The notes under the pieces are model-generated. The model worked only from the letters and a program-made list of their open reading frames with translations, was not told the origin of the DNA and searched no databases. A stretch of DNA of 64,000 nucleotides from Bispira polyomma (taxonomy: Eukaryota). A program made the translations under genes and the position numbers. This document shows, piece after piece, positions 4,373-41,300 of this stretch. The stretch lies in contig OZ287754.1 of the NCBI GenBank assembly GCA_965649765.1, forward strand, positions 33,108,001 to 33,172,000, written 5' to 3'. Within the stretch, counting starts at the first letter, position 1. Every line of letters starts with the position of its first letter.

Positions 4373-5102
4373 GTAAGTAAATTTTAGAGCATCTGAGGGG
4401 TTAAACTGCTTCTGATTTTCTTGCTTTGGCTGATTTCACATATTTTGTGGCATATTTCAAAGTTTATTACTTGACATACCAGTATTTTGGAATGTGTGGC
4501 ATATAAAAAATCAGGGCTAGGAAGTTTAATGTACTGGTCAGATTTGATATGTGACCTTCACCTCAAGGTCAAACTGTCACGGAAATATTTTATTAGTGAC
4601 TAGCATTGTTAAATCTACAGATTCACTATATACAGTTTTAACTTTTCAGCTTATAGCAGAAGGTCAACTTAAGTTCAGTAAATTGTAGTTTTAAGGTTGA
4701 CTTAAGGTCCCCTTAATAATTGAACTGAAAATAAGGTTGACTTAAGGTCACCTTAAATTAAATTTTAAAAATGAGAGGTCGTTTTAAGGTGGCCCTAACT
4801 TGAGTTTAAGAGTACGAACTTCTAAGTTTTGAATTCGGTATGCATGTGATGGCACCATGTGGTGACCCTAAATTGAGTTTAAGGTTATTTAGATTTAAAG
4901 CTTTGAAGATAAGATTTGAAGATAAGATTTGAAGATAAGATGTGAAAGAGTACATTATGTACTGATGTGTAAGTTGACCTTATGCCCAAGGACAGTCAGT
5001 ATTCTGTACTGCCCAGTTTTTATTTTCTTGTAACATTAACGTTTGTATATTTTCTTTTAACAGGTGACCTAAAGATGCCAGACCACCAAACACCAGAATT
5101 TC

Positions 5103-6078
5103 CTAGGAGTTGGACTGTTGGGCTTTTCTGGAAGAATCAGCGACCTGGATACCAGTCGGAGCAGAATCTGTTATATATCTCCACACGCAATCAGACGTCC
5201 AGATGCCATAACGTTGAATGTCCTGCACCTTCACGTTATTATTAAACACAAAGGTGGCACCTGAACGCCTGAAAGCATGGAAAGTGAGATTTGCCAGGTG
5301 GGGGTCCAGGAGTAGTAGAACATTTTTCAGGTGTCTTTTCACACGAGTGTCAGTCAAGGCCACCCAGGAACTACCTAGTTTAAACTGAAACAGAGAAACA
5401 TTGGAACCAGAGGGGGTTAATGCTAACACATTTTTAATGCAGTCACAGGACACAGCGTGGAATTAGCTACCACTGGGATAGTTATCAATCTAATGGTGTC
5501 ATTAGATCGCATAGTTTTGGACCATTTAATTAGCAAAGTAAAATAGCCAGGTTTGAAAAGCACATCCCCTCTGGCCAAATGTTTTAAAGGAGCAAAAGCT
5601 GCCAGAGTGTGGGCACAAGTTAGATAGTCTCAGAAAGCTGAAAAAGCTTGTTAAATATACTGCTTTAAAAATTTGCTCCATGTAAGTGCTGTTACACTTG
5701 GCTACTAACGAAGTTAACAGGGGCATGTCAAAAAAACTCTTTAGTTTTGCTGGTATAGGTTTGTTGATAAGCTTGACTATAGTACGAGTTGCGCGGATCT
5801 GTGAAGCAGTCCACATTTATATGAAATAGAATACACTTGGCCTTCACAGCAGACAAGTGGTTTGCAATTTGGGAGGCTGACATGGAGTTATAGTACAGGA
5901 ACTCTAAAAATGATAAAATTCTAAATACATTTACCTGGAACAGAGGCCACTGCATAAAGGCCCAATAGGCCAGAAAGAGCCTGAACATATAGTCATAAGC
6001 CCTAGCTGTCGACACAGCAAAGGCAAAGTGTAACCTCTTGCAAGCTCCACTTGTAAGCAGTGAGTCCATAGGATGCAT
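5103..6078 (-). pseudogene. Tyrosine recombinase ORF of E1, frameshifted
   Basis: ORFs 5728-6078, 5526-5816 and 5103-5453 together give the R...HxxR...W...Y catalytic residues. Confidence 0.88.
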
Positions 6079-6128
6079 ATCTGAAGTACAAACAATTATA
6101 CAAACATGTGTAGCTAATTTATATTGTA

Positions 6129-7425
6129 TTATCTATCCCCAACAGGGAGCCATTTTACTGGTTCAGCCCACTCAGCAAGCCAATACTCATTATTAGTAGT
6201 CTTATCCCAACGCAAGAGCAGATCAGCAATTTTATTTTTTACCACTAATATGTATAATACCCTTATGTCGATATCAAATCTGCTAGCCCACATGTGAATA
6301 TTCTGGGTATAAGCAGCCAGTATTGGATCCTGGGTACGCCCAGTTTCCAATATGCTCACAACTGCTTGATTATCGCACTTAAATAAGACTTTTTTACCCT
6401 GACACACATGGGACCAGAGTTTGAGGGCCACAAGTATGTTTATCATCTCTAAGGATGCTATGTTGTCATGTGACATATGCTCAGGTATGGTGAGTTTGTA
6501 TACTTCATTACCACAGATACCCCCCATCTCAGTGAGGCAAGAGTCCAGCTCCACCTGATTTGTGCGAGAAGAAGCAAACCCCATTTAACTGACTCATAAA
6601 TGTCCTGAACCATTTAAGATCATGGTTGAAATCTTCAGTTATCCGAAACCGATTTTTACCATAATTGTCCCTAAGCAATTGCTGCATGCGATTAAGGAAC
6701 ACACAAGTATATTTTATGCATTTTGCCACATACAGTAAGGAACCTAATAGAGATTGCAGCTCTTTCTTTGTGCAAAACGTTTTGCCTTGCCAAGTAGCAC
6801 AATTTTCTTTAATCTCAGTTGATTTTTCACTGGGAATGGAATTTGTAAAATTTTCTGTGTCTATAAGTATGCCCAGACACACGACCTGTGTACTGGGTGC
6901 CACCAACTTCTTTTTACTGAGAGTTAGGCCAAGTTCGCTTTAAAGGGCTTGCAAACGCTCATAAATAGGTGTAATTTTACTGGGCAGTGATACTGCCAAA
7001 AAAATCGTTGATGTAGTTATGAATACCAAATTCTTTTTTCATTATGTATCTCACTGCATCGGATAAACATTGAAAGATTGTTGAGCCATTCTGATAACCG
7101 AACGGCAAGCTTTTATCTATATAGCACTGGTTTCATTTTAAACCTAGTAAGTCTATGTCTCCTGGGTCAATCGGAACATGACGGAACGTGACGGAGCGCC
7201 CGACTGATGTCAACTTTTAAAATGTGAGACCCTCTACCCAGTTTTGTGACTTCATTGGTAATATTATCAATGGAGAGACAAGATAACAGAAATTCAGTTT
7301 CCAGATAAGAACTCACTGAAGCATCTGCATTTACCGACTGCCCGAGTGGCCAACTCAAGCTATTATTACTCTCCTATTGGTAGAACTCGATTATCCCGGG
7401 TCATCATGGGGGAGAAATAAAGGTT
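6129..7425 (-). pseudogene. RT/RNase H ORF of E1, disrupted
   Basis: ORF fragments 7167-7358, 6529-6906 and 6129-6584; YxDD is changed to YIND. Confidence 0.88.
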
Positions 7426-7844
7426 TGAATTGGGGGGCTCTCAAAAGGGCCTAGAATAGCACCAAAATTGACACTCCTCTTTGAGGTATGTATGTAGGCT
7501 CATGGACTGGAGCTGAAGCAGTATCTGGTTGGAACCAATATTCAAACCTCCATCCAGAGCCGGAGCAGTGACCTCCTCACTTTGGTCGGCACTGCCAGTA
7601 GATCCAGAAGTACTAGCTTCAAGTACACACACCGCCCTCACAGGCCGTTCGTGTTTACCCAGACATTTCGAACACTTGAAAACTGGAGGCATTATAACAT
7701 TTAAAAATTGTTAAACAAGTTAAAAACCCTAAAACCAGTAAAATTTTAAACTCAAAAGTTAAAATTTCCAAGATGTCCGTTTAAAAGTTGTTATTCTGAG
7801 AACATTACTGTGTAAAAGGCTGGAGAATTTAATTTGGGGCCGCC

Positions 7845-10110: not shown

Positions 10111-13100
10111 CCATAAATTATTAGTTAAGGTGACCATAGAAGTATCAAATCAGTTTAAGTTGTTTAGTTAATTTGACCCTACAGTTAAGTTTGAGGTCAC
10201 CCTAGATTAAAAAATGAGGTCATCTTAGCATGAGTTCATTGGTAAAACCCATTGTTTGGGTTGAGGTAAATTTAGATATCTAAATGAGTACAATATGTAC
10301 TAGAAGACAATAAGAGTACCTTATGCCCAGAGACAGTACCAGTTTCTTTACTGTCAGTCAATTAGCTAGTTGCTTAAGTGGAGAAAACGAATTGCTGCAA
10401 TGTGGACATAAGTTAGACAACCTGAGGAAGCTGAAGAAACTGACCAAGTATACAACCTTGAATACCTGATCCATGTACATAGAGTCACACTTTTTGGCAA
10501 ACACCAGCATTAGTGGTAAGTCAAATATACTTTTAAACTTGGCCTGTAAAGGTCCGTGGAGCTTAAGAGCTCGATGGTAGTATCCAATTTTTGGGTCAGC
10601 GAAGGCATCCAAATTGACATTTACTAGGATAAATTGAGCCTTAATGGCTGAAAGATAATTCAGAAAATGTGAAGGGGAAACCCTATTACAGGTCCGGAAT
10701 TCAAAAAAATATAAAAATGTATTCACCTGTGCTGGGGGGCACCTCATGAAGGCCCCAAATGCCAGAAAAAGCCTAAACAATCTATCATAAGCTTTACAGG
10801 TAGAACTAGCAACACCAGGATTCAGTCTCTGAACAGCTCTTGCTGTGAGTATTTTGAATTTGAATTGGGATATTTAGCGTCCACTCTAGTACCTGTTTAT
10901 GTTATTTTTGGACGGGTAGGTGAAGGAAACACTGGATACAGTTGATCAAGGTTTCGCACTGAAACCAGCTGCCCACAGTAAGGAACTACCACCTTTCCCA
11001 CATAGGCATTGACGGAAGTCGAACTCACGCCACCCAGAGGTGAGAGACCAGTGATTGTGAAGCACAATGCTTGCTAACCACTAGGCCATCGCACCCCCCC
11101 CCTAGCTGTGAGTAAAGCCACCCCTGGATGCTAAACTATGTAAAAGTAATATAAATAAACATACATTTAATGTCAGGGTTGACATACAATAAAGACTGTT
11201 AAGTGTGTAGCCACTCTACTTGCCCAACCAACTCACACAACAGCTTGTGGTTGGTCGTTGTTTCCTGCCACCTAGAAAGCAAGTCTGCAACCTTGTTCTT
11301 AGCCCCCATGATGTGTACCACATTGAGTTCTATGTCAAATTGACTGATTAACATGTAAATGTTTCTTGAATACGTGGCCAAAATCGGATCTCTGGTTTTG
11401 CCACTCTGTAGAATACTGACTAACAGCTTATGGCCCTGCCACACCTGAGCCCAAATTTTCAATGCTACCAAGATATTAGGCATTTATAAAGTTGCAATAT
11501 TATCTTGATTCATGTGCTGTGGTATTTTTTAATTGATAAACTTGGTTACCATGGATACCCTGATACCTGTTAAACAGGCATCAAGTTCAATTTGTGCTGT
11601 GCCTTTTCGGTGGGAGAAAAAGGACACCCCATTAAACTGCTCCATGAATGTAGTAAACCAATTTAGGTCTCTCTTGAATTCAGTGTTTATTTTTATTCTG
11701 CTTTTGCTATGATTTGCCCTCAGGATTTCCAACATGTAATTTAAGAATACTCGAGCATACATAATGCATTTAGCTACATAAAGTAGAAGACCCAATAAAG
11801 AGTGTAGTTCCTGTTTAGTACAGTGGCTTTTGCCCTGCCACTTAACACAAGCTGCTTTAATTTCCATTAGCTTTTCATTTGGTATGGAACAAGTGAAATT
11901 TTCGGTGTTTATTACTATTCCTAAACATACTACCTCTGTAGCAGGTGGAACCAGTTTCTTCTGACTAACTGTTAAGCCTAGTTCCGCCAAAAGTGCCTGC
12001 AATTGGACATAATTCTTGTCAATCATGCTGGGAAGCAAAATCGTTAAAAAATCGTCTATGTAGTTGTGGACAACAAAGTCCTCTGATCTCAACCTGACAC
12101 TGTCCGATGCAAATTTTAGATGAGACTCAAACTATCAAAATCCAGGGGAAATCCGTATTTTATCAGCAAAGGCAACTGCCAATCCCAATAATTAACAAAA
12201 TATTTAGCCCAGACCTGTGCATTAAGTTGGGAGGGGACAGGTATTTACGAACCACAATAATTGCCGGCTCTGATAATTTCATGCATTTCTAAAATACTTT
12301 TCTGTTCATGTTGTTTACTGACATCAAATATTTTATCACACAGAGCACTAACAGGTGTAAACCCATAGGGGAAGTTGTTCTGTTTTTGCCATTCTATGAA
12401 AGTATCAACATTCTGTGCTTTTTCTAACAGAAGCTTTTAATTTTGCTTTTGTCGCAACTCCAATAAATACTTATCCGACCCCCCATTGTCTTCATCTGTG
12501 TTGCTAGTGGTTTTTCCACGCTCTTTTGTCACTATATGAGAACAAGGTGTGACTACTGGGCCTCCACCCTTATTGACACATCGTCTGTCCCTGATTGTTC
12601 TAGTCATGTTGACATTTTTGACAACTTTGGCCACTCTGCCATTGTGTACATTATGTGTGCTTATTTGTGTTACCACACCATTATTAAGATAGCCGCTGGG
12701 GCCTCCACCCCAGTCAAGCTCCCACTTTTGTGTGTCAATTACATTGGCACCTTTTGTTCTGGAGATGTTACTAACACCTCTATCACCTTTATGTTTACTG
12801 TGAGTGGTGTCACATTCAACACCAGCCAACACCCTATCCCCATTGTTCCCTTCACACCTTTCCCCCAAGACTTTCTATCTGTTGTTAAGGCTCATGTTTT
12901 GGGCACTGGGGTATTTGGGCCATTGTTTAACTTTTCCTGGTATACCACATTTTCGCACCTGGCTTTTGCTTTGGTCAATATGACCCCCACGCGGGATTCG
13001 TTTCGATCACCACATTTACATTCGTGAGAGGCTTTTCTCCCTTTAAATTTGTACATACACTTTTGCTTGAGTTTATGTCACTTTTTTGACCCGCACCCGC

Positions 13101-14510
13101 AACATAATTCCTTACTGCATCACTATAACTAGTACTTTTTCCCCTTGTAATATTGACACATTTTATGTACAATTCCGATACAAAGTAGATTAAACTAGGT
13201 AAAACCTGACTTGTACACCATTCTAGTTAATACCGGATCATTTACTAAATCTTTAACCACTGCACTGCTGCAGTGGCCCCTTAGTTTTTTGTCACCTTTT
13301 TTGTGCATGTGTTTGTTTTATGACTGCCGTCGTACGTTTCACAGGTGTGCTTATAAAATTGAGTGTCCGTTATGTGGTTGGCTCGGTACTTGCAGATTCC
13401 TTCTTGAAAAACCTGCATGTAACAGAGCCTTGTTTGGCCCCTGTCTTTTTGACGCCATTTTGCAAATTGCAACCCAAATTTCCTGGCGTAGTGGTTGGAA
13501 TTATGTGCCTTTGCGCGTGGGCTCTGCATTTTATCAGCGTCAGTCCAGTTAAGCCTGTCCATCTCCATATTGGTTAATATTACTGCATGGCAAGCTTTGG
13601 CGGCCTCCCAGGAAAAATCCTGAGTGTCCTCCATTAACCTCCCCATGTAGTCCAACATGGCCACCCTGACCTCAGAACACTTTTCGTCTTGTATGATTCG
13701 GGTGAACCCTCATACCCATTGAACTAGGGATAAATCATGATATGTGCGCCTGGCTTTTGAACAACTGTATAATACATAGTTTTGAGGCCAATCTACAACA
13801 CACTTTACAATCACATCTACCCCACCTGCCCCTTGAGATTTAACCTTACCTTGGGGGTTTTTATTTCGGGTTTTTAACTCAGTGAGCCGCTGCTCTACCT
13901 GTGTTTGAATTTAAACGTATTACTTTAGAAATTCAACGCTAGGTACTATGTTGTCGTTACCATCGCTCACTGGGCCACAAAGCTGGCAGAACTATTTTCA
14001 GACACAGAAACAGGGTTTCTAGCCTTTGTTCCGTTGCTCTCAGACAGCGCCGCCTCAGTCAGCTGCACCTGTTTGTCCATTTGTTCTATAACTTGATTCA
14101 TAGTTTTTAACTGATTTAAAATGGCCATCAAAACAGAATCGTTCAGCTCACCATTTACTGTAGACTCCTGGGTGCTGCTGCCTTGGCTAGCTTGATTCAC
14201 AACAGAACAGTACTTCCCCGTAGGTCTCTCATGCTTTTCTAAACATTTGGAACACGAATATACTTTTACAGGAGGCATGACTAGGTACAAGTTTGACAAA
14301 TAAAACACTAAAATATAAAATAATTATTTAAATTCCAGTATTTCTTTTGTTTTATTTACTTGGTGTTCTGCAAACTTGGAAAGAGCGGCAAAAATTAAAA
14401 GGGTGTGGGCTTATATAGTCACTGGCAGCCCTCCCCCCTCACGATTAGCCTGGTATCCCAGAACTGAATTACATATCGCCAAGGCGTTACACCATACAGT
14501 ATGTTTATAA
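10111..14510 (-). mobile_element. Degenerate tyrosine-recombinase retrotransposon E3 (same group as E1)
   Basis: gag from 14278 (CSKCLEKHERPTGKYC; C-terminal Cys/His cluster at 13281-13420); RT with NYIDD; RNase H (ELDACLTG, NKVADLLSRW); YR N-terminal half (FFSFLRLSNLCPH) truncated at 10358. Confidence 0.9.
10852..11104 (-). mobile_element. Second copy of the same tRNA SINE, inserted in the E3 YR ORF
   Basis: Highly similar to 9840-10096. TSD gctgtgagta at 10842-10851 and 11105-11114. Removing it restores HPGVALLTARAVQRLNPGVASSTCKAYDRLFRLF, homologous to the E1 YR N-terminus. Confidence 0.92.
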
Positions 14511-16004: not shown

Positions 16005-16386
16005 ACTGATTTATCGCTGTCATCCTAAGTTATCTTTTTCCTGAGTTATGTTTCACTCGGGCCTTTGTAACGACCTATCTTTTGGAAAGTCTGAGTTATC
16101 CTTTCACTCAGACCATTTCTAACTACCTATAATTACAGATGGAAAGATAAGCCATGATGTGGATAGGTGAATTTTTCAGCGATTTTGGTCCTTGGAAGAG
16201 CTAATTAAAAAGGATGGAAAAATAACTCGTTGAAAGTTTTAAAAACCTTGCCGAAGGACCCTGAGTGGTCCGAATGTCAAAGAAAAGTCTTGTTACCTCA
16301 ACAACCTCCCCGATTATGTCAACAGGTATGCCCGATCGGATAATTGTAATGGTCGGGGGCTATGTTTGGTATAGTAGAACAGGGGT
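16005..16386. mobile_element. Terminal fragment of the PIF/Harbinger family (H3)
   Basis: Inverted copy of the H1 subterminal region 20770-21200. Ends GGGGGCTATGTTTGGTATAGTAGAACAGGGGT, like the H2 end at about 32640-32672. Confidence 0.8.
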
Positions 16387-19236: not shown

Positions 19237-19896
19237 GTAGGTATGTGGGGAGACTACCTCTGTGATTCATACAACCAGTGGCAAGGTTATATCTGTAAAT
19301 ACAAACTGGGTAGGTATGTGGGGATACTACCTCTTGATTCTATAGACCAGTGGAATGGTTATATCTGTAAATACAAACTGGGTAGGTATGTAGGGAGACT
19401 ACCTCTTGATCCTATACACCAGTGGAATGGTTATATCTGTAAATACAAACTGGGTAGGTATGTGGGGAGACTACCTCTGTGATTCATACAACCAGTGGCA
19501 TGGCTACATCTGTAAACACAAACTGGGTAGGTATGTTGGGAGACTACCTCTTGATCCTATAGACCAGTGGAATGGTTATATCTGTAAATACAAACTGGGT
19601 AGGTATGTAGGGAGACTACCTCTTGATCCTATACACCAGTGGAATGGTTATATCTGTAAATACAAACTGGGTAGGTATGTGGGAAGACTACCTCTGTGAT
19701 TCATACAACCAGTGGCATGGCTACATCTGTAAACACAAACTGGGTAGGTATGTTGGGAGACTACCTCTGTGATTTTATAGACCAGTGGCAAGGCTACATC
19801 TGTAAATACAAACAGGGTTGGTGTATGGGAAGACTACCTTTGTGATCCATACAACCAGTGGCATATTTATATCTGTAAATACAAATGCAGATAGGC
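19169..19896 (+). repeat. 72/73-bp tandem repeat, 10 copies, spanning the lectin exon 3' end and splice donor
   Basis: acaaac anchor at 19228, 19301, 19373, 19445, 19518, 19590, 19662, 19735, 19808 and 19881. Confidence 0.95.
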
Positions 19897-20313
19897 TAAT
19901 TTATATGAATATTGTTTTGACCAGTCAATGTCCATAGAGAAAGCGAAATCTAGCAGTTGCCCAGTTAACAGAATCAGATATTTTCTAGTGTTATAGATTT
20001 TTATAGCCGAACAATGTTTTCTAGTTAAACTATACTTGTTATTATGGAAATAGGTGTAGGTCTTAATCTACTTAGAGGCACTATCTTGTAACATCAGAAG
20101 AGATAAACAAAACATAGATTCTGGACTGGTTGGGTTGGTATCATTGATGTAATCAGTCTATGTTTGTTGAAGCTTTACAGTGAAATATTCAAATGTTTTA
20201 ATATTGTTTATATGTGCAATCAGTTTATTTCAAAGTAGCCAATTTTATAATTTTTGGTATATGTACCTATTTTGGGTTAAGATTTTTGTTATATGTACCT
20301 ATTTTTGGTGAAG

Positions 20314-20418: not shown

Positions 20419-21393
20419 GTATGTATCAAAACTTTATGTACAACTAGTTTTACCGAATAAAACATACAACCGGTTCCCGGTATATCCTCCATACACAATG
20501 TTCTCAATGTCATATTTCAAATGTAATGCCTCCAAAGCCGGTTCTGGTAATCGCTCTTTGATTCTAAAAATAAAAGTATATTTACTCATTGAGTTCAGAA
20601 AACAATGCCAAGCCTCTTGTAAGATAACGATTCCCTTCTAACAGTAGATCTCCTAAATAATAACATAAATGTGTCATATATTAGGGCATTATAACACTAA
20701 ACCTAAATATTTTGATACTTCAAGCTGTAAGAAAACCATGACAGGGTAATTCTTAAATTGAGGATGACATCCATTCGGTCCTTTGCGAGGTTTCCAACAT
20801 GTTTGAAAACATCCGTGAGTGAGTAATCATCAGCCGATAAGTCATTGTCACTCGAGGTCACTCGTAACCTTTCAACGAGTTATTTTTCCATCCAACAACT
20901 TATTTTTTCAATCGATCCCTCCCAGGACCCAAATCGCTAGAAAATTCATTTATCCACATCCCGGCTTATCTTCCCATCTGTAATAGGTCGGATGATGCCG
21001 TCATATCATCACTTTCCCGCGTTATTGAATCTTGTGCCAACGGTAGGTTGTTAGAAATGGCCCGAGTGAAAGAATAACTCTGGCTTTCCAAAAGATAGGT
21101 CGAAAAGATAACACAGGAAGACAAAAGATAGGTTATTAAAAAGCCCAAGTAAAAAGACAACTCGAGGAAGACAAAAGATAACTCGAGGGTGACAGCGATA
21201 ACTCTGGCAAAAAATCTTTTTGGCCAACGAGTGTTTGGGGGGGAGGTGGGGTTGCAGAAGATATAAAAGGGGGCCGTTATAGTCGTCTTCATCACATTTT
21301 GTTCAAGCTTCCAGAGAGTACACATCTATTGGGCCCCCAAATTTTATTTTACTGAGAAAGTGTGTTTATTTTTTATTAATATACAATATTATA

Positions 21394-22166
21394 ATGCCAC
21401 CAAAAAGGAAATCAAACAAAAGGAGGATAGAGACAGTGTAGGAGGAGGAATACAGAGAGTTCTATATGGGGAGACACTTCGGGAAGAAAGCTGAGACCGC
21501 TGGGGAAAGTTAAGTGGCTGGTTTCATCAGGAGGCAGAATAATATAATCAGCATACAGGTGATGTTAAGCTGAGAGATCATTTTACTGAGGGGAGTGGCA
21601 TACTCTTGAAGCGGAGAAACTTCCCGACCAGTACATCAAGTAACTCAGGAAAGAAGCATTCTACCAGGTCTGCAATATCCAAGAGAGGGCTTCTATTTGT
21701 CAGCAAGTCTTTCCAACTGCAACAATGTCAACAACCTATTATCCCGTATCAGATGGCAGCCCTTCCTTCATCCTACAGCAACAAGGACACTTTGTCTACC
21801 ACTAGGCACCAAGTAGACAACAGCCACCACGGCCTCCACAGCACTCACTGGGCAAGCCACCACACCAGTCCATTCCGGTTGTCACAAACATATCCTAGCT
21901 GGAAGTTTGATGGCCAGCACAAATGGTGTTTAGTACTACCAGGCTCCCACACCTAAATCAGACATCCTCAACACAGCCTCAGTCTCAACACTGGTAAGAT
22001 ATTTGTAAATGGCCACGGGGACATTCGGTACCAGAACATTGACACTCCTAAAACTTTCACGCCTCTAGGACCAGACACTCAGCAGACAGACACAGACACA
22101 ACCACTTGCACCGCAACCTTCACAACCACTTTGTCATCAGCCAGCACCACCTCCACAGACCATTAG
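21394..22166 (+). pseudogene. Harbinger accessory ORF2 of H1, disrupted
   Basis: Starts MPPKRKSNKRRIE. KLPDQYIK.LRKEAFYQVCNIQ and SDILNTASVSTLVR align to H2 ORF2 (KLADEHFNHFRREAFNLVNVIQ, SDLLNASTASTLLR). TATAAAA at 21262. Last frame ends TAG 22164-22166. Confidence 0.65.
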
Positions 22167-22199
22167 ACAGCCTCCACTCCACTCATCAGCAACCAAAAA

Positions 22200-22220
22200 G
22201 GCTCTTTTCAGGGCCACCCA
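22200..22220 (+). terminator. Histone-type 3' stem-loop after H1 ORF2
   Basis: CCAAAAA-GGCTCT-TTTC-AGGGCC-ACCCA (one U.G pair), 33 nt after the stop codon. Confidence 0.8.
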
Positions 22221-22470
22221 AAACTTCCAAAAACAATGTCTAAGCTTTGTTGTTCATCAAAAAATTTAAAAAAAAACCCGATGACAAGAACCAAACTGAC
22301 TCACACATAGTTTAACTCACGTATATTTTTTTCCATTTATTTTTGTAGGGGGCAAGTCGTTTTTGTTTCTGTGTGTATGTGAGTTAAGTCATTTGTGTGG
22401 GCAGTTTGCTTCTTGTCAAGGGAGCTTTTAAAAAAATCATAACCAATAACAAAACCTCAGATATTGTTTT

Positions 22471-22490
22471 TGGTGGCCCTGAAAAGGGCC
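22471..22490 (-). terminator. Histone-type 3' stem-loop after H1 transposase
   Basis: Minus strand AAAA-GGCCCT-TTTC-AGGGCC-ACCA, 28 nt after TAA (22519-22521). Confidence 0.85.
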
Positions 22491-22518
22491 TTTTTTTGTT
22501 GGTCTTCACAGGGACCTA

Positions 22519-23632
22519 TTAGCTCATACTCTGCCAAGTCACTGCCCCCTCATTCTGGAAGTAGCCCATGTATATATCTCTTTGTTCATTGGCTGCCCCG
22601 CTAGTATTCCTTCTTCTGGGATGGGTGGGTCGTCTTCTAGATTTTGGTGCAGTATTTCCTGGTTTATACTAGTGGTTCTCATCATATTGTGTAGGACGAC
22701 ACAGGCTATGGTTACGGTGGCTACCACTGATGGTTCTTGCTGCTTGGTAGAGAGTAGAGAATTTCTCTACCACCATTCTCTTCCGGGAAATCTTGTAGTT
22801 GTAACAGCCAGGGTTTCAGTGCAAAGGCATCATCTCCCAGAATTAAGTAGGGGATGGGATTCCTAAAAGAGGTTATGGCTTCAGGAGGGATGGACAGATT
22901 TTCTATATTCTCCTTTAGTTCTGACCTATTGCATATCTTGGAACCGGAGCTGGACTCACTAGATCCCAGGTTAACCCACAGGAACATGTACTCTGTGTCC
23001 ACCAAGGCTAGCATCACTATGGAGTGGAAGCCCTTGTAATTGAAATATTTACTGCCCCCTTTTATTGGACATCGAATAGCACGCTTTCCATCTATGGCGC
23101 CCAGGGCATTTGGTACATGTGTTCTTGAAGACAGACTCAACCTTCTTCCAGAGCTCTGAGGTGGTGGGGGAGGCCAGAAATTCTTCCTGGCACTCATCTA
23201 TGATGGCCTGGCAAACCGGTGGCACAAACTTTGTGTATCCCAGTTGCCAAATGTCTTAAAGTGAAAGCTATCTTGAGTCTAAGGGACAGTGGTTTCATGA
23301 ATCAGGTGGTCTGTTTCTGTAACCTGTGCCCCACTTCCTCTCCATTTCCTGGAATAATTCCGGGGACATCCTTAGAAAATTCCTGTAAGACCCAAGAACT
23401 TGCCCCTCCATGCGTGGCAGAAGTTGTGTCTAGTGACCATGTTCTTCCTTTCGCTTTAGCCATGGTTTGACCTAGAATCTACATTTTGCTCTTCTTGTTA
23501 TGCCCACCCTTCCTTAAACATCTGGGTTCTCTGCCTCTCGGAGACTTCTTCTTCTTCTTCCTTCAATGTCTATAATAGCCATTAATTGTATTTGCATGCT
23601 CTTGCAATTTCTATTAATGTCTGTTGAACCAT
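22519..23632 (-). pseudogene. Harbinger (HARBI1-like DDE) transposase of H1, frameshifted
   Basis: PNALGAIDGK, YFNYKGFHSIVMLALVD, YLILGDDAFALKPWL, IACVVLHNM; C-terminus RDIYMGYFQNEGAVTWQSMS*. Confidence 0.92.
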
Positions 23633-24271
23633 CTCTTTCACTTGACTGAACAATTAAAACTGACTGGATACATGGTTCCAGCCCTTTAATATAGTTTCTT
23701 CGGGACAATCTGGAGGTTCCCCCGAGTGTGAATGACCAGGATTGGGTCAGTCGGGGAGGTCGGGTCATAGATCATTGGTTCTTACAAACAATCCGGCAAT
23801 CAATCGCAATGCAAAAAATCAATCAGTCCTTGTGTATGACTTATCTTTTCAATTGTTAACCAATATGAAAATATAATCAGGTGACTCTCGGTTTTTTAAC
23901 ACAGATAGGGCCACAATGGGGTAAAATGCCCACAAATGACTATTATCAAATTATCAAGGCTTGGCTCCAATTGCTTGGCTAACTGAAACAGTACCGTAAA
24001 GAAAATATAATCACAATTTAGGCAAAATATATAAACAATTTACCCTATTTTTACTAAAAAATCCAGCATAAAGGTGATCTCATTACTGAAAAACATACAC
24101 AATCTTCTGTTATTACAATCAAGCCTTGAAAATTAGAGGCATTTAGTATATCAGTATGTTAGGTGAACATTTATTATTAAACCCCTTTTTTATTTTTGTC
24201 AAAGTGATATTTTTATCTGATTACAAATACACCTCTATTTTAAATTCTACTATCCGAACCTGCTGTGAAGT

Positions 24272-24642
24272 AATATAATATGCATTATTACAGGTATACT
24301 ATTTGTGTGTCTTACTGACAGGGTGTGTTCATATAATAAGCATTATTACAGGTGTACTATATGTATGTTTTCCTAACAGGGTGTGTTCATATAATAAGCA
24401 TTATTACAGGTGTACTATATGTGTGTCTTCCTGACAGGGTGTGTTCATATAATAAGCATTATTACAGGTGTATTATATGTGTGTCTTCCTGACAGGGTGT
24501 GTTCATATAATAAGCATTATTACAGGTGTACTATATGTATGTCTTACTGACAGGGTGCTGTAATACAGGTGGTTGGCCTTGTGTTCATATAACAAGCAGT
24601 ATTATTACAGGTATACTATATGTGTGTCTTACTGACAGGGTG
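24272..24642 (+). repeat. 58-bp tandem repeat (6 acceptor copies) spanning the 3' splice site of the last lectin exon
   Basis: acag|ggtg at 24321, 24379, 24437, 24495, 24553 and 24638. Confidence 0.95.
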
Positions 24643-24874
24643 CTGTAATGCTGGTCAGGTGGTTGGCCTTACCTTCCTGTTCCTGGCTCTAACTGGTCTG
24701 ACAGTGGCTACAGTCTACATCATACACAGACTACGGACTGGCCAGGGTTTGCCCTTTATTAGTCAACCTGACGGAGCACTGCCTAGTCAACCTGTTACTG
24801 GTCTGGATAAAACAGCTACACCGGCAACCAACTTCCTCAGTAACCCCAACTATGAGAACATTTCTAATGCTTAG
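24639..24874 (+). CDS. C-type lectin terminal exon: transmembrane helix plus cytoplasmic tail
   Basis: VVGLTFLFLALTGLTVATVYII hydrophobic helix, HRLR stop-transfer, tail ending NPNYENISNA*. In phase with the stalk exon; AATAAA near 24925 and 25153. Confidence 0.82.
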
Positions 24875-29769: not shown

Positions 29770-30591
29770 CAGCCACGCCCGGAGCTGCCAGATCTCCAGT
29801 CATACCACAACTTCCTCAGGATGCCCCTGACGTATTCCAGGAGATGGAGAGGAGGGTGGGGCACAGGATACAGACACAGACCACCTGGTACAGGAAGGCA
29901 CTGCTCCCTGGACTTAAGATAGCTATCACTTTGAAGCATTTGGCTACTGGGGTGTCCTACACATTGCCGCAGTTCGTAGTGGGCAGGTCAACCATAACCA
30001 AGTTTTGCCACAAGTTTGCCATGCCATCATCAACAAGTATCAGGAAGAATTCCTTACATACCCCACCAGCCCTGATGACTGGAAGAAGGTCGAGTCTCTG
30101 TTCCGAAACACATGGAACATTCCTAATGCCCAGGGGCAATAGACAGCAAATACATCTCTATGAGATGCCCGAGGAAAGGAGAGAGTACTTCAACTACAAG
30201 GGGTACCACTCAATCATCATGCTTGTCCTGGTAAATGCAAATTACCATTTTCTGTGGGTCGACATAGGTTTAAGCAACTCATGCTTTGATGCCCAGATTT
30301 TTAACAGATCCGAACTAAAGGAGGAAAATAAAGGATCACTCAATCAACTTCCCCCCCTGAAACCATTAGCCCCATGGTCCTGCAGAATGTGATGAGGACC
30401 GCAGCTATTAACATGGCTAATCCAGCTAGTTCAGAAGATGACCCACCTGTCCACAGATAGCATCACTTGTTGGAGAAAACAACCCACCCAACTGTAGAGA
30501 TACCAGCAGTGTGCCCAAAGAACAGAGGGAGCTACTCATGGAATATTTCACCAATAAGGCGGCAGTGCCATTACAAAACGACCAAGTTTGA
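29770..30591 (+). pseudogene. Harbinger transposase of H2, truncated and frameshifted
   Basis: YHNFLRM, PGLKIAITLKHLATG, YFNYKGYHSIIMLVLVNANYHFLWVDIG; C-terminus RELLMEYFTNKAAVPLQNDQV* (TGA 30589-30591). Confidence 0.9.
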
Positions 30592-30636
30592 GTCTACACC
30601 TCTACACCTGAGCCTGAGTCAAGAATAAACCTAAAA

Positions 30637-30657
30637 GGCCCTTTTCAGGGCCACCTA
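30637..30657 (+). terminator. Histone-type 3' stem-loop after H2 transposase
   Basis: AAAA-GGCCCT-TTTC-AGGGCC-ACCTA, 45 nt after the stop codon. Confidence 0.85.
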
Positions 30658-30729
30658 AAACATCCAAAAAACATTGTCTAAGCTGTTCTTGATTTTTTTT
30701 TTATAAAACTCCTCATGACAAGAAGCATA

Positions 30730-32036
30730 CTCTGAGGAGAGTTGAAGCTGTAGAGGCATTCAGTAGGTCTGATACTCCTTCCACTGACAATGGGTTTGTG
30801 TACTGGTGGCTAGTGTTGACTGCGGCCTGACAGGTGAGCGCTAAATACGTTGTAGCAGTCTTTGTTACAACAGACGTTGTTACTGTTGAGATACAAATGC
30901 GGATGGAGCCATCTGGTATTTGTACCTGGTACTGCTGATGCTGTGGGAACTGTGGCACTGCTTGTGGTGTGACCACCTGGACCTGGATAACGTTCACAAG
31001 GTTGAATGCCTCCCTTCTGAAGTGATTGAAATGTTCATCTGCCAATTTCATCTGCCCTCAGCCTTGGGCTTGCTGGCCTCGTGGAGGAAACCTGGGATGG
31101 TGTCCTGTATCGTGACCAGCCTATCTCTCAGCTCAGTAAACAGTTCCGCCCTGGGGTTCAGGGTTGATCTGGCACAGATTGAAGATTATTTTGAGGTTCT
31201 CCCAGTAGATGCTACCAGCAAGAAAGACTCCATCTTTGTTTCAGTTCCCTGGTCTGTGTCTGACTGGGATATTGAATGCACCTCCCTATCCCCAGCTGTG
31301 TCAGTCTGATACTTCACATTATGTGGTGGTTCAACATTTAAGAATGATCAACAAAATGAGCCCGACTTTGAAATTGGAGCATTCGGGGCAAAAAACTCAA
31401 TTACTTAAATATTTTGGGCAGAAAAATATAAGTGTGGGGCGACCTTCCCGATCGAACTGATTGTGTCCCATTTTGACACCAACCAAGATCAACCTTAAAG
31501 TCCGTAATAAAACTGACCTGACCTCCCCGATCCCGATGTTTGATTAGGATCAAACTTATTGACAATACGATCTGACGTATTGCCCTAGGTCGACCGTGTC
31601 GGCAATAGGATCTGACAGATCTGTACCCCCTTCTCACACAATCGTACTTCTAATAATCAAGGTCAGGACTGCTACGGCAAAATACCAGCAAAATGGTTTT
31701 ATATTCTTCCACACCAGTGTTAGGACAGGCTTGGAGTGTGATAAGACCTAACAGACAGAACGTAATGGCAATCTGATTGAACTTATTTGGCGATAACAAC
31801 CTTCCCGTTCTTAGAGTCAGAAGAGACCACCACATTCGCCCCGTTTTTGTCCCCGACCTATATGGACACACCCCGGACCTCAAAAATCGGGAAGGTTGGG
31901 GAGCAAATCGGCATAGTGGAACCAGCGTTCCCTCCTTCACCATCACCAGGGTCTGGGAAGGCTGTGTTTCTGGGATGAAATCCTGCACGTCTACATGCTC
32001 AATCCTCCCCTTCTTACTCTTTCTTTTTGGTGCCAT
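30730..32036 (-). pseudogene. Harbinger accessory ORF2 of H2, split by a nested insertion, 3' end deleted
   Basis: Homologous to H1 ORF2 at the N-terminus and in two C-terminal blocks. Confidence 0.65.
31320..31930. mobile_element. Nested non-autonomous Harbinger-like element inside H2 ORF2
   Basis: Right end AATCGGCATAGTGGAACCAGCGTT resembles the H2 TIR. Subterminal inverted similarity (cccga.ttt.ga...tcgggg.caaaaac). Left end poorly defined. Confidence 0.55.
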
Positions 32037-35000
32037 AATTATTCACAATTGTATCTTAAACATTTTTATTTTAATATTTTACGCTCAAAAAACAACGAAG
32101 TAATATTCCCAATAATAATCTCTATCTGTAGAACTGTTGATAGTTGTGAACTCTCCAAGATACTGTACCTGGATGAATAAAGATCTCTGTCAAGGCCCAC
32201 ATATATATTATCAGGACCCCTCCCAAAATGCGTGCTGACCAATAAGATTTCGCGCCCAAGTCTTCTTTTGACACCCGAGCTATCCTTTCACTCCCCCGAC
32301 TTATCTTTTGTTTCCCCCAGAGTCATCTTTTCAACTGGGGGAATACAAAGGATCTATTGATCTTTGACAAATGACACGATAAGTCGGGGGGAATAAGTCG
32401 GATGATTTGCCCAACAAATTACGGGAAGATTGGAAAGAGAGGTCTTGAGATGGTAACAAAAAGTTATTAGTGGGTTATTACTGGCCACAATTGGCCCTGA
32501 GTTATCGGCCTTGCCATCCATATTCGCACTCGCGCGCAGCGGCTTTAAACATGTTTGAAAACCTCTGATTCAAAAAGATAAATTGTTGGATGCCTCCGAC
32601 CTCCCCGATAATTGCACAGATCTTATAATCAGGACAGTTGGGGGCTATGATTGGCATAGTGGAACAGGGGTTTTATATGTAATAATATACGACTGTAGAA
32701 TATCATTGATGGTGAGACATTCTACATGACACTGTCAGAGGTAGTGGGGTCTTAAAGACACTGAACAAACCACTGTAAAAGTGTGAAATAAACCTGCAAA
32801 AACATTTCACATTCTTCACAACTTCTCACTTGAAATCCTGCAATTATTACAAGAAGGGGATTAAAACTTGTGAAGTAAGAGATTTGAGGAGACTTGTGTC
32901 AATAGAAAGGTGTTGTGATTCTGTGGTTTGCGTTAAGATACCCTTTACATTGTATATGTATGCTCCCACATTATTGCAGCTTATAGTATACCTATGTCAA
33001 ATCTTATTTTAGCTTTGACTTTACCATTGATTTAGCTCTTTTAAATTTATGGGATAGATTTTCCGAAATACAAGTACACAATGACTTACATATTTCCCTT
33101 GACTTTGAGCCTGCGTTTACTTTGACCCTGGAATTCTCAATTGAAGTAAAAAATAAGATAAAACATGTATGATCAAATATACAGTGCTAGGGCAATTCTA
33201 CAATTTAACAAGCAAATTATGTACGTATTTATGCACAAGATCTCCCATACATGTGGACCCTGGATCATTCTTTTGTGGGCAATGTTTCAATGTGAGTGGT
33301 TCTTCATAAACACCACAATGCACAGTGAAATCTAACAGGTGTTTCAGGTACAAACTAATCACCCCTTTGTTACATACACAGAGAAGTGGCCGACTTAAAT
33401 AGGAAACTTTAAAAAACAATCTAGAGTTGATTTTTTATTTTGCACTCAAGAAGCTTGGCCGATAATTCTTTAAACTATCCTTCGGGGTTTAAACCTAAAT
33501 TGCTGTAATACAATATAATGTAAAAACTAATAACATCAGAGTTATCTGCTGGGTTTCTCTTCAAATAATACTAGTGGACTATAGCTCTATGATTTCTATA
33601 TCCCATATTTTTTGTCCACTTCACGTTAAGAAAAAACTTCTAAAACTGTTGTTGAACACTGTTATGCGTGTGAAGAGACTTAAACCTATAGGGAGGACTT
33701 ATATTATTGAGAGATTTAATGCCCATATAGAGGTTTAAAGCTGACTGGCACCATGAAGGAGGGGCTTCAGTCTGCTGTTGACACATACTACACTTTAAAT
33801 AGCATTGGCATCCACTACCACCAGCCCCCAGGCGAAAGTGTGTGCATGTTTTAGCCTGGGTTAGACCATTAACTGTGATATTTGCACATTTGCCATCTAA
33901 AACATCGCCACCTACAATTTACCAAGCCATTACAAACCTTAACAACATGCTTCGTCTTGATCTTTAAATTTTGAAAATGTACTAATTTTAAATAGCAAGT
34001 CAATTACTTAGAGTTGTATTATAGAGAGACTCAGACTCTATGGATACTTTATACTTGATGTCGTTGTATATGTGGGGAGTATCAGATGAGTGGTAGATGC
34101 TCACTTGCTTACTGTAATACTGCTCCTTACATAATGCACTCTATATATGGTAACATATATATGGTAATATTTTAAATTCGAGCTACTCAATACGCTGCCT
34201 TTATTGTGGCAACTGGTGCTCATCTCTATTTTTCATGTTGCTAAAGATCAATGACCTAGCTAGAAGATATTAAGATTTGACTGAAAACTAATATTATAAT
34301 GGTAATGTACCACTGGTGATAGATGATCAAATATGGATTAGACTTTATTGTTAAATCGGCCAGAAAATAGTGAACCCTGTCAGGTAAGTAGGACGGTCGT
34401 GGTCAAAATATATTGAATTCTTGGTAAACCTGTCCTATTTGTCGGAAGTAACAAGATAGATTTTGATATACTGGTCATACGAATGATGTATTTTAGAATT
34501 AATGTATTTTTGTCAAACCTTAGAAGCAGTGTTAAATTGTCAAGAAAAACAAAAATATTGCTGACATAAAAATGTTTTAAATGGGTTTATGTGTGTATAA
34601 ATTGTTTAAATATGCAAATATGCAAAGCCAAATTGCTTTAATGAAGAATATTTGACTGTGTTAGTTTTAAGTATGCAATTAATTCAATTGTGCCCTGTGC
34701 ATGACAATGTACAGGTGAATTCCTTTCAAAGTGAGACACTCGGTGTATTAACAAAGGTCACATACTACATTTAGACTATGTTTAGTAGATTTCACCTGGT
34801 CTTTAGACTTACCACTTTACCATATTCAGCTACATCAGGGCCTTGTGTCACATACAGACTGAAAGGTCTACGAGTCATTCCTATACCTAAACCTAAGTAC
34901 CACATTCATAGATTCCATTGTTACTGGACATTACCTAGGCGATCACCATTTTGTGTAATAGAAATTTTAGCAAACTATTACAATCTGAAGTATAAGTTCA

Positions 35001-37665: not shown

Positions 37666-38370
37666 ACCAAGTAGTGACCTATAACTAATTGGTGTACAAT
37701 TGTGTACCAAGTAGTGATCTATAAGCATTTGTCTACAATTGTGTACCAAGTAGTGATATATAACTAATTGGTGTACAATTGTGTACCAAGTAGTGATCTA
37801 TAACCAATTTGTGTACAATTGTGTACCAAGTAGTGATCTATAACCAATTTGTGTACAATTGTGTACCAAGTAGTGATCTATACCCAATTGGTGTACAATT
37901 GTGTACCAAGTAGTGATCTATAACCAATTTGTGTACAATTGTGTACCAAGTAGTGATGTATAACCAATTTGTGTACAATTGTGTACCAAGTGGTGATCTA
38001 TAACCAATTTGTGTACAATTGTGTACCAGGTAGTGATCTATAACCAATTGGTGTACAATTGTGTACCAAGTAGTGACCAATAACCAATTTGTGTACGATT
38101 GTGTAACAGGTAGTGATCTATAACCAATTTGTGTACAGTTGTGTACCAAGTAGTGACCAATAACCAATATGTGTACAATTGTGTACCAGGTAGTGATCTA
38201 TAACCAATTTGTGTACAATTGTGTACTAAGTCGTGATCTATAACCAATTTGTGTACGGTTGTGTACCAAGTAGTGACCACTAACCAATTTGTGTACAATT
38301 GTGTACCAGGAAGTGACCTATAACCAATTGGTGTACAGTTGTGTACCAAGTAGTGATCTATAACCAATTT
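37666..38370. repeat. 40-bp minisatellite, about 17.5 copies (CCAAGTAGTGATCTATAACCAATTTGTGTACAATTGTGTA)
   Basis: Direct periodicity of 40. Confidence 0.97.
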
Positions 38371-41300
38371 ATTCTCCCTTGATAAAAGTTAACAATATTC
38401 TTATCAACTGTATTCTGCACAGCTTTCGTAATTACTGCAAAACTCCACAGCTCATAATTAAAAAGCGAATGAACATATCTTGTAGTTCAAACAACTTTAT
38501 TTATCAGGTAAATATGTTTTGCCCCATGCTTGTTAAAATGTTAACGATTTAGTGGGATATTTGGGCCATATCTGGACACAGTTTACTATGTTTTGGTTTC
38601 CTAAATAACAAATGTCTGAAGAACAAAGTCCTATTGTATGTTCATGATATCATAGGTTGAGAATTCCTCCTTGAATTCAAGGTGGTTGTGACCACATACT
38701 TGTGAAAAAATTTTGACTAAGAGTGGTGTATCTTTTACCTCAGCATTCTGTTCACAGAGATAATTGTGTGCACATCACAACTGATTAACACAAATACTAG
38801 TAAAAAGACTTTGATTTGTCAAAAACTGTCATGAGATTTTAAGGATACAAAAAGTGCAATTACTTCCATGGACAAATTTAAGTAGGTAATCATTTTACGA
38901 AGCCTTAACTATGTGTCAGTAGAGGACGTTTTTCTTTGAAGTCACATTCTTGAAATATAGATTCAAAATTAGTACTACTTTGTTTTAATAACCATTAATA
39001 ACAAGAATATTCTAAATAATTGTCTGAGGTCATGACATCCCAGCGTTTCCATCATATTTTGTCATTAGGTGGCCAATTATATTATATCTTCAATATATGC
39101 ATCATATCAAACTTCATTTGTGTTAGTGAAATGTTATGGGTAGTGTTTGAGACAGGCCAATACTGACACGTGTGGACATAACTGTTCACTTGTTTGTACA
39201 TAAAGGCACATTTACATGTTAATACACATCTCTGTCTCATCAGTAGATAGGTATTAGTCGACCCGCTTACTGGCAATGAAACCGAAACCTTGTATTTGAA
39301 TTTGATTAGCAAACATAATTTCCTCCAAATTTTTTTAAATTTTATTTATCTTTAAAAGGAAAATGCCAATAATGCTCATAAATACTAGTAATAATCTTTA
39401 GTAATAATGCATTTTTTAAGATGTCACTTTTAAAGTAGTTCTAAGACATAGCAGTCAACTATTGCAATAGATAGAATGGCATGCAGTGACTTCTGATACA
39501 CATGTCACCAGACTTTCACTCACCCCTCTTAAATGGATATCTATTCTACAGAAGTCTATGTCATCTCCATATAGTACACATTTCGGTATTGTGTAAATAG
39601 GTATGACATTTATCCACTACATTGTAAGATTGTAAAGTATGGAGAAAAAATATTTGATTTTAAAAGACACCCTAGATATACACTATTGATGGAAAATTAT
39701 GTATAATTGGCCCACATTTTAACTGTTAATCTAATCTAATCAATTCCGTAATGGTGCTTAATTTCCGTATTAGCAGAATCTAAGGCACAAAAAAGAGATC
39801 TCTTACAGATGTTGCAAATGCATTTCCTTCAAACTTTTTATACTGTTGGCCCATTTGTTAGGATTTGAAGGTAAAGCAGACCAGGTTCAGTGGGTTATTC
39901 TATGTTTTGTCAGAATAATTATTACAGTATTAAGCATTACACACTATTTCCACACTAGGGTTGTTTCCAAGTGGCACCCTATTCAGGGGGTGTTGTTTTG
40001 ATATCTAAATAATAATTGAACCATAAAATACTTAATTATATTGAAAATGTGTGCGGGAATATTATTTATAGTCTTATATAATTGTCCTAATAACCAATTT
40101 AAACAGAAATAGATCAAAGTCACGTCAATAAAAAAAAAATAGTTTTTATAATTCTCTGACTTTGCAATAGCATTGTCAATGTGTTTTTTTATCTACTTTT
40201 TAAGTTGAATAAAAAGTAACAAATCAGCATAACATTGAATACTCTGTCTCACATTTTAAGATCAAAATCATTGGTGTTGAAAGGTCCCGAGTGTTCTTTT
40301 TAAATGGTCCCAGTTTTGAGATGGCCTTTTACTGTTTAAACCATGCCCCATTGTATGTCTCACATTATTAAATGCAGAACATTTGATTTGTTATTACCTA
40401 CAATACATATTCATACATATTGTTATTTACAAGAATATTAAATGATATTTCCCAATGGAGAGTTTATCTCAAGTGTATCTAGCTTTTGTTCACTATATGG
40501 TAACAAAGAATGCTCTGTGTGATCAACTGATACAAAATGTGAATTCCTTAAAAGCCACTCTCACCGCATGGAACTCTTTTATTAAGTGAGTAAACAGTAC
40601 TTTCGACCTAATAGATCTCCTCAGTAACTACAAAGAAATCAGGCCTTAGCAGACGTCAAGAAACTGTGTAAAACACCACACTTCTGTCAGATAAATTTAC
40701 TTTACCGTAGATTTTAGTCTTCAATACAATAATGAAGTCTTGAGAATTGTACTTCTTTGAATGCACATCTGAATCATGTAATGTCCCCTTACTGTTCTTG
40801 GTTTGCACATACAAAATCTGGTTTATTTAGCTTAGTAGTTCCTATTCTATCAACGAAAGGTCCCGTTCCTTGTAAGATTACTTTAACCTCAATTAAACAA
40901 AGTTAAACCCCTTTAAGTCAAACCTCAAGGACTAACCTAAATACCTCTACTTAACCAGTTGCCAGGCTAGATTATATAATGAAAGGCCTTCGTATGACTA
41001 ACATTTTCTTTACATAATTATTTTTTCAAATCAAATGAGATTATATGCCCAAATTGAGCCTCAATGCAGGCTATAATGGATTGCTTGCGTCTGAGTACAT
41101 CTGCACACTTGGTTTAACCTGTTTAACTTATTGACATCTTCATTGTAAGTCTTTTAAGACCTTGTAAAAAGCTGATGGTATTCATATAAAACAAAGATAA
41201 CATTGTTAGCCAAGTATTTAGTTGGTCTCAAAAGAAATTTCCAAAAAGTAGTTTTTTCCATTGCACTTATTCATGTATTACAGTGTTTTATCGACACTTT

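What the first reader, a model, noticed from the sequence alone, without database searches (positions are those of the whole stretch)
22164..22521. Both genes of a PIF/Harbinger DNA transposon end in histone-mRNA 3' stem-loops: possible use of the SLBP/U7 S-phase pathway
Seen: the minus-strand transposase stop (TAA 22519-22521) is followed 28 nt later by AAAA-GGCCCT-TTTC-AGGGCC-ACCA (22490-22471). The plus-strand ORF2 stop (TAG 22164-22166) is followed 33 nt later by CCAAAAA-GGCTCT-TTTC-AGGGCC-ACCCA (22200-22220). Each is in the sense orientation of its own gene. Both genes look intronless and have TATA-like boxes upstream. No histone ORF is visible in the window. Established: a 6-bp stem with a UUUC loop, A/C-rich 5' flank and ACC(C)A 3' flank, a few tens of nt after the stop codon, is the SLBP-binding element of replication-dependent histone mRNAs. 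It directs U7-dependent cleavage, poly(A)-independent translation, S-phase-restricted accumulation and oocyte storage. Inference: this Harbinger family makes non-polyadenylated, histone-like mRNAs, tying transposase and accessory protein to S phase or to oogenesis/cleavage. A cut-and-paste element gains copy number precisely when it moves during replication. Such mRNAs would also be missed by poly(A) RNA-seq. I do not know of a description of this in Harbinger elements, but I cannot search the literature.
Basis: partly seen in the sequence, partly recalled or inferred. Interest (0 to 1): 0.93.

Follow-up and report, generated by a model that had tools for sequence, protein, structure and literature searches.

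The report
Transposon genes with histone-type mRNA ends
A group of cut-and-paste transposons ends both of its genes with the complete two-part RNA signal that animals are thought to use only for histone messages, and keeps it in active relatives from other samples, so these elements probably borrow the histone RNA-finishing machinery, although no RNA data could test this.

Summary
Observation confirmed. Both hairpins pass the Rfam Histone3 cut-off, and a third follows the transposase of a second Harbinger at 30637. The window copies are dead (frameshifts, stops, deletions), but the signal belongs to the family: 1,241 exact transposon-type stem-loops occur genome-wide (control 0), and 9 of 11 top transposase copies on the part of contig C1 checked have one 78-110 nt behind them. 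Relatives in four other samples, including a family with 99-100% identical copies, carry it after every gene end that could be read; five other Harbingers lack it. Three stem pairs change compensatorily. Best reading: SLBP/U7 3' processing captured from a histone gene (0.75); S-phase timing as the benefit is inference (about 0.5). No description was found in the searchable literature. The scan has noted the same thing before on other copies in this genome.

The parts
21262..21268 (+). TATA box upstream of ORF2
   Evidence: sequence
21394..22166 (+). Broken Harbinger ORF2 (MADF/Myb-SANT partner gene), internally deleted, with frameshifts and stops
   Evidence: MADF domain in relatives
22200..22215 (+). 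Histone-type stem-loop of ORF2, 33 nt after the stop
   Evidence: (36.8 bits)
22226..22246 (+). Histone-downstream-element-like sequence at +11..+31 after the stem, the same register as in the host histone genes
22456..22473 (-). Downstream element of the transposase gene, pulled to +2..+19 by an 11-nt deletion specific to this copy (probably no longer processable)
22475..22490 (-). Histone-type stem-loop of the transposase gene, 28 nt after the stop
   Evidence: (39.1 bits)
22501..22516 (-). Decayed second hairpin 26 nt upstream of the main stem-loop; looks like an old tandem duplicate and is better paired in other copies
22519..23620 (-). Broken PIF/Harbinger transposase (DDE_Tnp_4) with several frameshifts and stops; 5' end approximate
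23983..23999 (-). Tentative degenerate terminal inverted repeat (8 of 14 matches) plus TAA, at the position where relatives have their TIR; no left TIR found (homology to other copies starts near 20778)
29770..30591 (+). Broken, 5'-truncated transposase of a second, related Harbinger (67% DNA identity to the first over 559 nt)
30637..30684 (+). Stem-loop (30637-30652) and downstream element of the second element's transposase
   Evidence: (39.6 bits)
30713..32036 (-). Broken ORF2 of the second element; no stem-loop behind it in this copy, present in relatives L042-L044
32659..32672 (-). Terminal inverted repeat of the second element

Best explanation
The locus is a dead copy of a two-gene PIF/Harbinger DNA transposon from a lineage whose convergent transposase and MADF genes each end in a full replication-dependent-histone 3' cassette: a 16-nt stem-loop, an ACC-type tail and a downstream element at histone spacing (shown). 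The cassette most likely came from a histone gene and has been kept by selection as RNA (inferred from compensatory changes, retention at both genes, and loop/stem constraints). In intact copies SLBP would bind the hairpin, U7 snRNA would pair at +11..+31, and the pre-mRNA would be cut 4-5 nt after the stem, giving poly(A)-less mRNAs handled like histone mRNAs (inferred from the known pathway). The likely benefit is that both proteins peak when DNA is replicating, when cut-and-paste moves raise copy number, or are stored in oocytes (least certain step, about 0.5).
For: Rfam hits. 1,241 exact transposon-type hairpins against 0 for the reversed control. On C1 up to 65.09 Mb, 9 of the 11 transposase matches have an exact sense hairpin 78-110 nt after the match end, and the 100 listed hairpins form 17 facing pairs and no back-to-back pair within 1.5 kb (read off). 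Both genes carry it in L045, L046, L053-L060 and L061, and L062 after its transposase; L053-L060 are 99.1-100% identical copies with intact ORFs. It is absent from Mercenaria, Pinctada, S. purpuratus and Littorina Harbingers and from P0064. In 24 diverse ends 98.6% of stem cells pair, three pairs change on both sides, and the second G-C pair and loop U1 and U3 never vary. The host's H1, H2A, H2B, H3 and H4 genes share the downstream element and its spacing. A U7-like locus antisense to it, with the Drosophila Sm-site sequence, and a second similar locus 133 kb away; an SLBP gene is present. In one active family the two genes have different stems, so they are not merely homogenised copies.
Against: The window copies are broken and one has wrong spacing. 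The U7 candidate was found with a pattern built from the downstream element, so the duplex energies are partly circular; its 3' hairpin and promoter were not read, and RF00066 did not report it (only 65 of about 298,000 candidates were scored). AATAAA/ATTAAA occurs further downstream in intact relatives. Efficient processing is reported to depend on the histone locus body (PMC4896052, abstract seen), which dispersed copies may not reach. The first stem pair is A-U in one family and mispaired in L052 ORF2. Compensatory changes are few events inherited by subfamilies.
Confidence: 0.75

Rival explanations
1. U7/SLBP processing is used, but the selected benefit is not S-phase timing: it is a compact terminator that stops two convergent genes from overlapping (avoiding double-stranded RNA and small-RNA silencing), or a route around poly(A)-linked surveillance.
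For: Both convergent genes carry the signal, 260 nt apart in the window and about 0.4-1.3 kb apart in other copies. Tandem duplicates of the hairpin recur.
Against: Other Harbingers with the same convergent layout manage with AATAAA. A histone-H2A-like promoter in one basal element hints at wider histone-type control.
Confidence: 0.3
2. SLBP-binding only or dual ends: the hairpin is bound by SLBP for translation or maternal storage, while most transcripts read through and are polyadenylated downstream.
For: Poly(A) signals 176-486 nt after the transposase stop in intact relatives, and one on the minus strand of the window's intergenic stretch. Copies are dispersed, away from histone clusters.
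Against: The downstream element and its spacing, which matter only for U7 cleavage (PMC7491329), are kept as well as in the host histone genes.
Confidence: 0.12
3. Non-functional relic of a captured histone 3' end, copied to both genes by inversion or gene conversion and carried along passively.
For: In this family the two 3' ends form an inverted repeat of about 130 nt at 70% identity. All host copies that were read in full are decayed.
Against: The motif is conserved between families whose transposases are only about 50-60% identical and whose flanks do not align, with compensatory changes. It is present in an active family, with different stems at the two genes.
Confidence: 0.07
4. The motif acts as DNA (binding site for ORF2 protein or transposase, or a cruciform), or as a site through which host U7 represses the element, as for human LTR12.
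For: U7 represses LTR12 elements through HDE-like motifs (PMC11417402). The stem is a DNA palindrome.
Against: The motif is always in sense orientation just after a stop codon; G-U wobble variants are tolerated; loop U1 and U3 are fixed. The LTR12 motifs lie near transcript starts and act on transcription. An element would lose a purely repressive site.
Confidence: 0.06

Closest known systems
PIF/Harbinger DNA transposons (animal two-gene type)
   Same: DDE_Tnp_4 transposase plus convergent MADF gene, short TIRs and TWA flanks.
   Different: Both genes end in a histone stem-loop and downstream element. Five other Harbingers examined have none; four of them show AATAAA within about 150 nt of the transposase stop or further down.
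Replication-dependent histone mRNA 3' end (RF00032, SLBP, U7 snRNP)
   Same: 6-bp stem, 4-nt loop, ACC tail, downstream element at the same spacing and of the same sequence type as the host's own five histone genes.
   Different: It sits on non-histone genes dispersed in more than a thousand copies. The stem usually has C-G where the host histones have U-A at pair 4. Histone mRNAs are described as the only non-polyadenylated mRNAs (bioRxiv 10.1101/2025.02.15.638447, abstract).
Human HERV1/LTR12 HDE-like motifs bound by U7 (PMC11417402)
   Same: A mobile element carrying a sequence complementary to U7.
   Different: The LTR12 motifs lie mainly near transcript starts and mediate transcriptional repression; here the match follows a stem-loop at the 3' end of coding genes at cleavage spacing.
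Replication-coupled transposition of maize Ac/Ds and IS10 (PMC5371812)
   Same: Cut-and-paste elements gain copies by moving during replication.
   Different: Those sense hemimethylated DNA; here the proposed coupling is through mRNA 3' processing and turnover.

Membership tests
PIF/Harbinger superfamily | DDE_Tnp_4 (HARBI1-like) transposase | tested here: met
   PF13359 above cut-off in both window remnants; 50-60% identity to full-length relatives
PIF/Harbinger superfamily | Second ORF with Myb/SANT (MADF) domain | tested here: met
   PF10545 in L038, L045, L046, L053-L060; in the window copy most of the domain is deleted
PIF/Harbinger superfamily | Short TIRs and 3-bp TWA target duplication | tested here: met
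   The same 12-14-nt TIR, flanked by TAA or TTA, at both ends of L045 and L007 and at single ends of many copies, including window 32670; degenerate or missing in the first window copy; matched pairs of target duplications were not checked copy by copy
Replication-dependent histone mRNA 3' end | 16-nt stem-loop meeting the RF00032 model | tested here: met
   36.8, 39.1 and 39.6 bits against cut-off 34; several relatives score 22.6-35.2, some below cut-off
Replication-dependent histone mRNA 3' end | Hairpin conserved as structure (covariation) | tested here: met
   3 of 6 pairs change on both sides, 98.6% of cells paired, 0 of 500 shuffles as high; few independent events
Replication-dependent histone mRNA 3' end | Downstream element at fixed spacing, like that of host histone genes | tested here: met
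   Same motif and register (+11..+31) in host H1, H2A, H2B, H3, H4 and transposon ends; spacing broken in the window's transposase copy
Replication-dependent histone mRNA 3' end | Complementarity to the host's U7 snRNA | tested here: inconclusive
   Candidate at G000 C5:22553898 with Sm site identical to Drosophila U7; found with an HDE-derived pattern, 3' hairpin unread, not reported by RF00066
Replication-dependent histone mRNA 3' end | Host encodes SLBP | tested here: met
   PF15247 in two exons on C5, both above cut-off
Replication-dependent histone mRNA 3' end | Gene lacks introns | tested here: inconclusive
   Coding regions are single ORFs in intact relatives; 5' UTR introns cannot be excluded
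Replication-dependent histone mRNA 3' end | mRNA ends 4-5 nt after the stem, without poly(A) | not testable with these tools
Replication-dependent histone mRNA 3' end | SLBP binding, U7-dependent cleavage, S-phase-restricted accumulation | not testable with these tools
   needs experiments

The most novel reading that the evidence does not exclude
A Harbinger lineage took over a histone gene's expression cassette (3' end and, in at least one branch, an H2A-like promoter), makes the first known non-histone animal mRNAs finished by SLBP and U7, adjusts its downstream element to each host's U7, and thereby times transposition to S phase or early cleavage.
Probability: 0.45. Interest if true: 0.93.

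Novelty: new variant of a known kind. Interest (0 to 1): 0.8.

Why it matters
The stem-loop/U7 end is regarded as exclusive to replication-dependent histone mRNAs. A natural non-histone user would break that rule and give a test of whether this end works away from histone gene clusters and the histone locus body. It would also be a new way for a cut-and-paste element to couple to replication, show that some transposon mRNAs are invisible to poly(A) RNA-seq, and warn that most dispersed Histone3 hits in such genomes are transposons. An active family with near-identical copies (ERZ22147071) makes the question directly testable.

Tried and rejected
RF00066 gave three sub-threshold hits that could not be examined. 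Ten literature searches found no description of histone stem-loops in Harbingers or other transposase genes; a 2008 survey of histone 3' ends recalled from memory could not be opened, and Repbase and Dfam were not searchable. The hairpin at 7436 was rejected as chance. A third gene in the element was considered and dropped: the region upstream of ORF2 is subterminal sequence shared with other copies, and extra hairpins in loci belong to nested Harbingers of other subfamilies. A single origin of the stem-loop lineage is neither shown nor rejected (p-AU 0.073). A general histone-promoter likeness was not found: only 1 of 11 stem-loop-lineage promoters matched strongly. P0043 gave no DNA. Folding z-scores of the whole 3' regions were uninformative.

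Full report
Observation. Both pass the Rfam Histone3 gathering score, and so does a third at 30632-30677. The consensus pattern matches four times in the window against 0.20 expected; the fourth match (7436) mispairs, does not fold and is dismissed. No histone ORF is among the window's ORFs.

The element. The flanking genes are remnants of a PIF/Harbinger transposon: a DDE_Tnp_4 transposase and a convergent ORF2 whose relatives carry a MADF domain. Both are broken here by frameshifts and stops, and ORF2 lacks most of its MADF part. The third hairpin follows the transposase of a second, related Harbinger at about 29770-32672. The family TIR, flanked by TAA or TTA, is found at both ends of L045 and L007, at single ends of many copies and at window 32670. 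In the first window copy it is degenerate on the right and missing on the left. The host is an animal with a 1.035-Gb genome; I did not identify it.

Family-wide in this genome. A DNA search returned many dispersed copies, most of them 65-80% identical to the window copy. Anchoring on the transposase C-terminus rather than on the hairpin, most copies whose 3' end survives show the hairpin or a decayed form of it about 30-100 nt later. An exact pattern for the transposon-type hairpin, which excludes the host histone version, has 1,241 matches and the reversed control none. On contig C1 up to 65.09 Mb, where that list is complete, 9 of the 11 transposase matches have an exact sense hairpin 78-110 nt behind the match. 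The 100 listed hairpins include 17 facing pairs and no back-to-back pair within 1.5 kb (read off). Of 14 loci fetched around Rfam hits, four are histone genes and ten are Harbingers.

The host's H1, H2A, H2B, H3 and H4 genes (L037, L039-L041) have the canonical hairpin followed by about 35 nt of conserved sequence. The transposon ends share this sequence at the same distance from the stem. This is the position of the histone downstream element, which pairs with U7 and sets the cleavage site at a fixed distance (PMC7491329). A pattern made of its reverse complement plus a U7-type Sm site gave five matches (control 2), of which one is a clean candidate at C5:22553898. Its Sm site, read, is identical to that of Drosophila U7 (PMC12360213), and a similar locus lies 133 kb away. 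The candidate pairs with host and transposon ends in the same register, +11 to +31, at -14 to -27 kcal/mol. Because the pattern was built from the element, the pairing is partly circular; the adjoining Sm site is not. Its 3' hairpin could not be read, and RF00066 did not report it. The genome encodes SLBP. In the window's transposase copy an 11-nt deletion has collapsed the spacing, which fits a dead copy.

Other samples. The nearest transposases in the protein collection (50-60% identity) come from unnamed ENA assemblies. In ERZ25073805 (L045), ERZ22147071 (L046, L052-L060), ERZ27316600 (L061) and ERZ27317245 (L062, transposase end only) the hairpin and a downstream element follow each gene end that could be read; a few are imperfect or below the Rfam cut-off. 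L053-L060 are 99.1-100% identical copies with intact 438-aa and 392-aa ORFs, so the signal is present in a recently active family. In that family the two genes have different stems, which argues against simple homogenisation. Harbingers from Mercenaria, Pinctada, Strongylocentrotus and Littorina, and P0064, have no hairpin. The tree has two well-supported groups with hairpins, one of which includes the hairpin-less P0064 at its base; their union is weakly supported, and holding them together without P0064 is not rejected (p-AU 0.073). One origin with a loss, or two origins, are both possible. I could not establish which species these samples represent.

Selection on structure. Across 24 ends, 98.6% of stem cells pair, pairs 1, 3 and 4 change on both sides with G-U intermediates at 3 and 4, and the second G-C pair and loop U1 and U3 never vary. 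From my own knowledge these invariant positions are the ones SLBP reads. The changes are few events inherited by subfamilies, so the shuffle values are not probabilities. Sequence upstream of the stem does not align between families.

Origin. The transposase promoter of L061 matches the host H2A promoter at 27 of 31 columns around a GGATCC motif and TATA box (score 43 against 22.8 +/- 2.9, 0 of 200 shuffles). A looser GGATCC-TATA arrangement precedes the transposases of L052 and P0064 and was not seen in the four named outgroups. Most promoters of the lineage show no such match, so this is a lead that promoter and 3' end were both taken from a histone gene, not a result.

Mechanism. Shown: the complete cis-signal after both genes, its conservation, and the presence of SLBP and a U7-like locus in the host. 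Inferred from the known pathway: SLBP binding, U7 pairing, cleavage 4-5 nt after the stem and poly(A)-less mRNA (0.75). Inferred further: S-phase or oocyte and cleavage-stage expression, useful because cut-and-paste elements gain copies when they move during replication (PMC5371812); about 0.5. Rivals are a terminator role that prevents overlap of convergent transcripts, dual ends using downstream poly(A) signals, a passive relic, and a DNA-level or repressive role as for LTR12 (PMC11417402).

Limits. 

Novelty. Ten searches of the paper library found no report of histone-type ends on transposase genes; subscription journals, Repbase and Dfam were not covered. The element is a member of the PIF/Harbinger superfamily and the 3' end meets every histone-end feature testable in DNA; the combination appears undescribed. 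The scan has noted the same feature on other copies in this genome. I read those notes after forming my reading, they agree with it, and they are not counted as evidence. Verdict: real, a new variant of a known kind, interest 0.8.

Noticed in passing
G000 C5:22553898-22553929 and C5:22420644-22420675 (not fetched): Two U7 snRNA-like loci, antisense to the histone downstream element and followed by a Drosophila-type Sm site; not reported by RF00066.
   Followed up: partly
L061, about 30 nt around the TATA box upstream of position 689; L037:3504-3535: The transposase promoter of a basal stem-loop Harbinger matches the host H2A promoter at 27 of 31 columns (GGATCC plus TATA box); looser versions in L052 and L051.
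   Followed up: partly
L061:2054 and 2826; L062 about 1357: The downstream element in these two samples differs from that of this genome in its distal half, possibly tracking another host's U7; L045 and L062 have a UAUC loop.
   Followed up: no
window 22501-22516; L046:6329 and 6354; G000 C1:44729720 and 44729751: Tandem duplication of the stem-loop, 25-31 nt apart, recurs behind the transposase in several subfamilies.
   Followed up: partly
window 22195-22323 and 22376-22495: The two 3' ends of this family form an inverted repeat of about 130 nt at 70% identity, suggesting that one was copied from the other.
   Followed up: partly
window 16008-16385 (-): A third fragment of the same Harbinger group: ORF2-side subterminal region with TIR.
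   Followed up: partly
window about 5100-7700 and 10350-14310 (-): Two broken retroelements that look, from their translations, like tyrosine-recombinase (DIRS/Ngaro-type) elements with gag-like, RT, RNase H and recombinase pieces; only the RNase H piece gave Pfam hits.
   Followed up: partly
window 54862-55773 (+) and 51387-51746 (+): Ankyrin-repeat coding sequence (303-aa ORF and an upstream piece), probably a host gene.
   Followed up: partly
window 19500-19900, 24273-24650 and about 37800-38400: Minisatellite arrays with units of about 58-60 nt, two of them flanking the first element.
   Followed up: no
L039-L040 (G000 C4:54.707-54.812 Mb): A tandem array of about 60 histone H1 genes with a 1,727-bp unit, separate from the core histone clusters (units of about 4.5-4.8 kb).
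   Followed up: partly
L053-L060, about 7410-7730: A 43-nt tandem repeat of variable copy number between the two genes of the active family in ERZ22147071.
   Followed up: no
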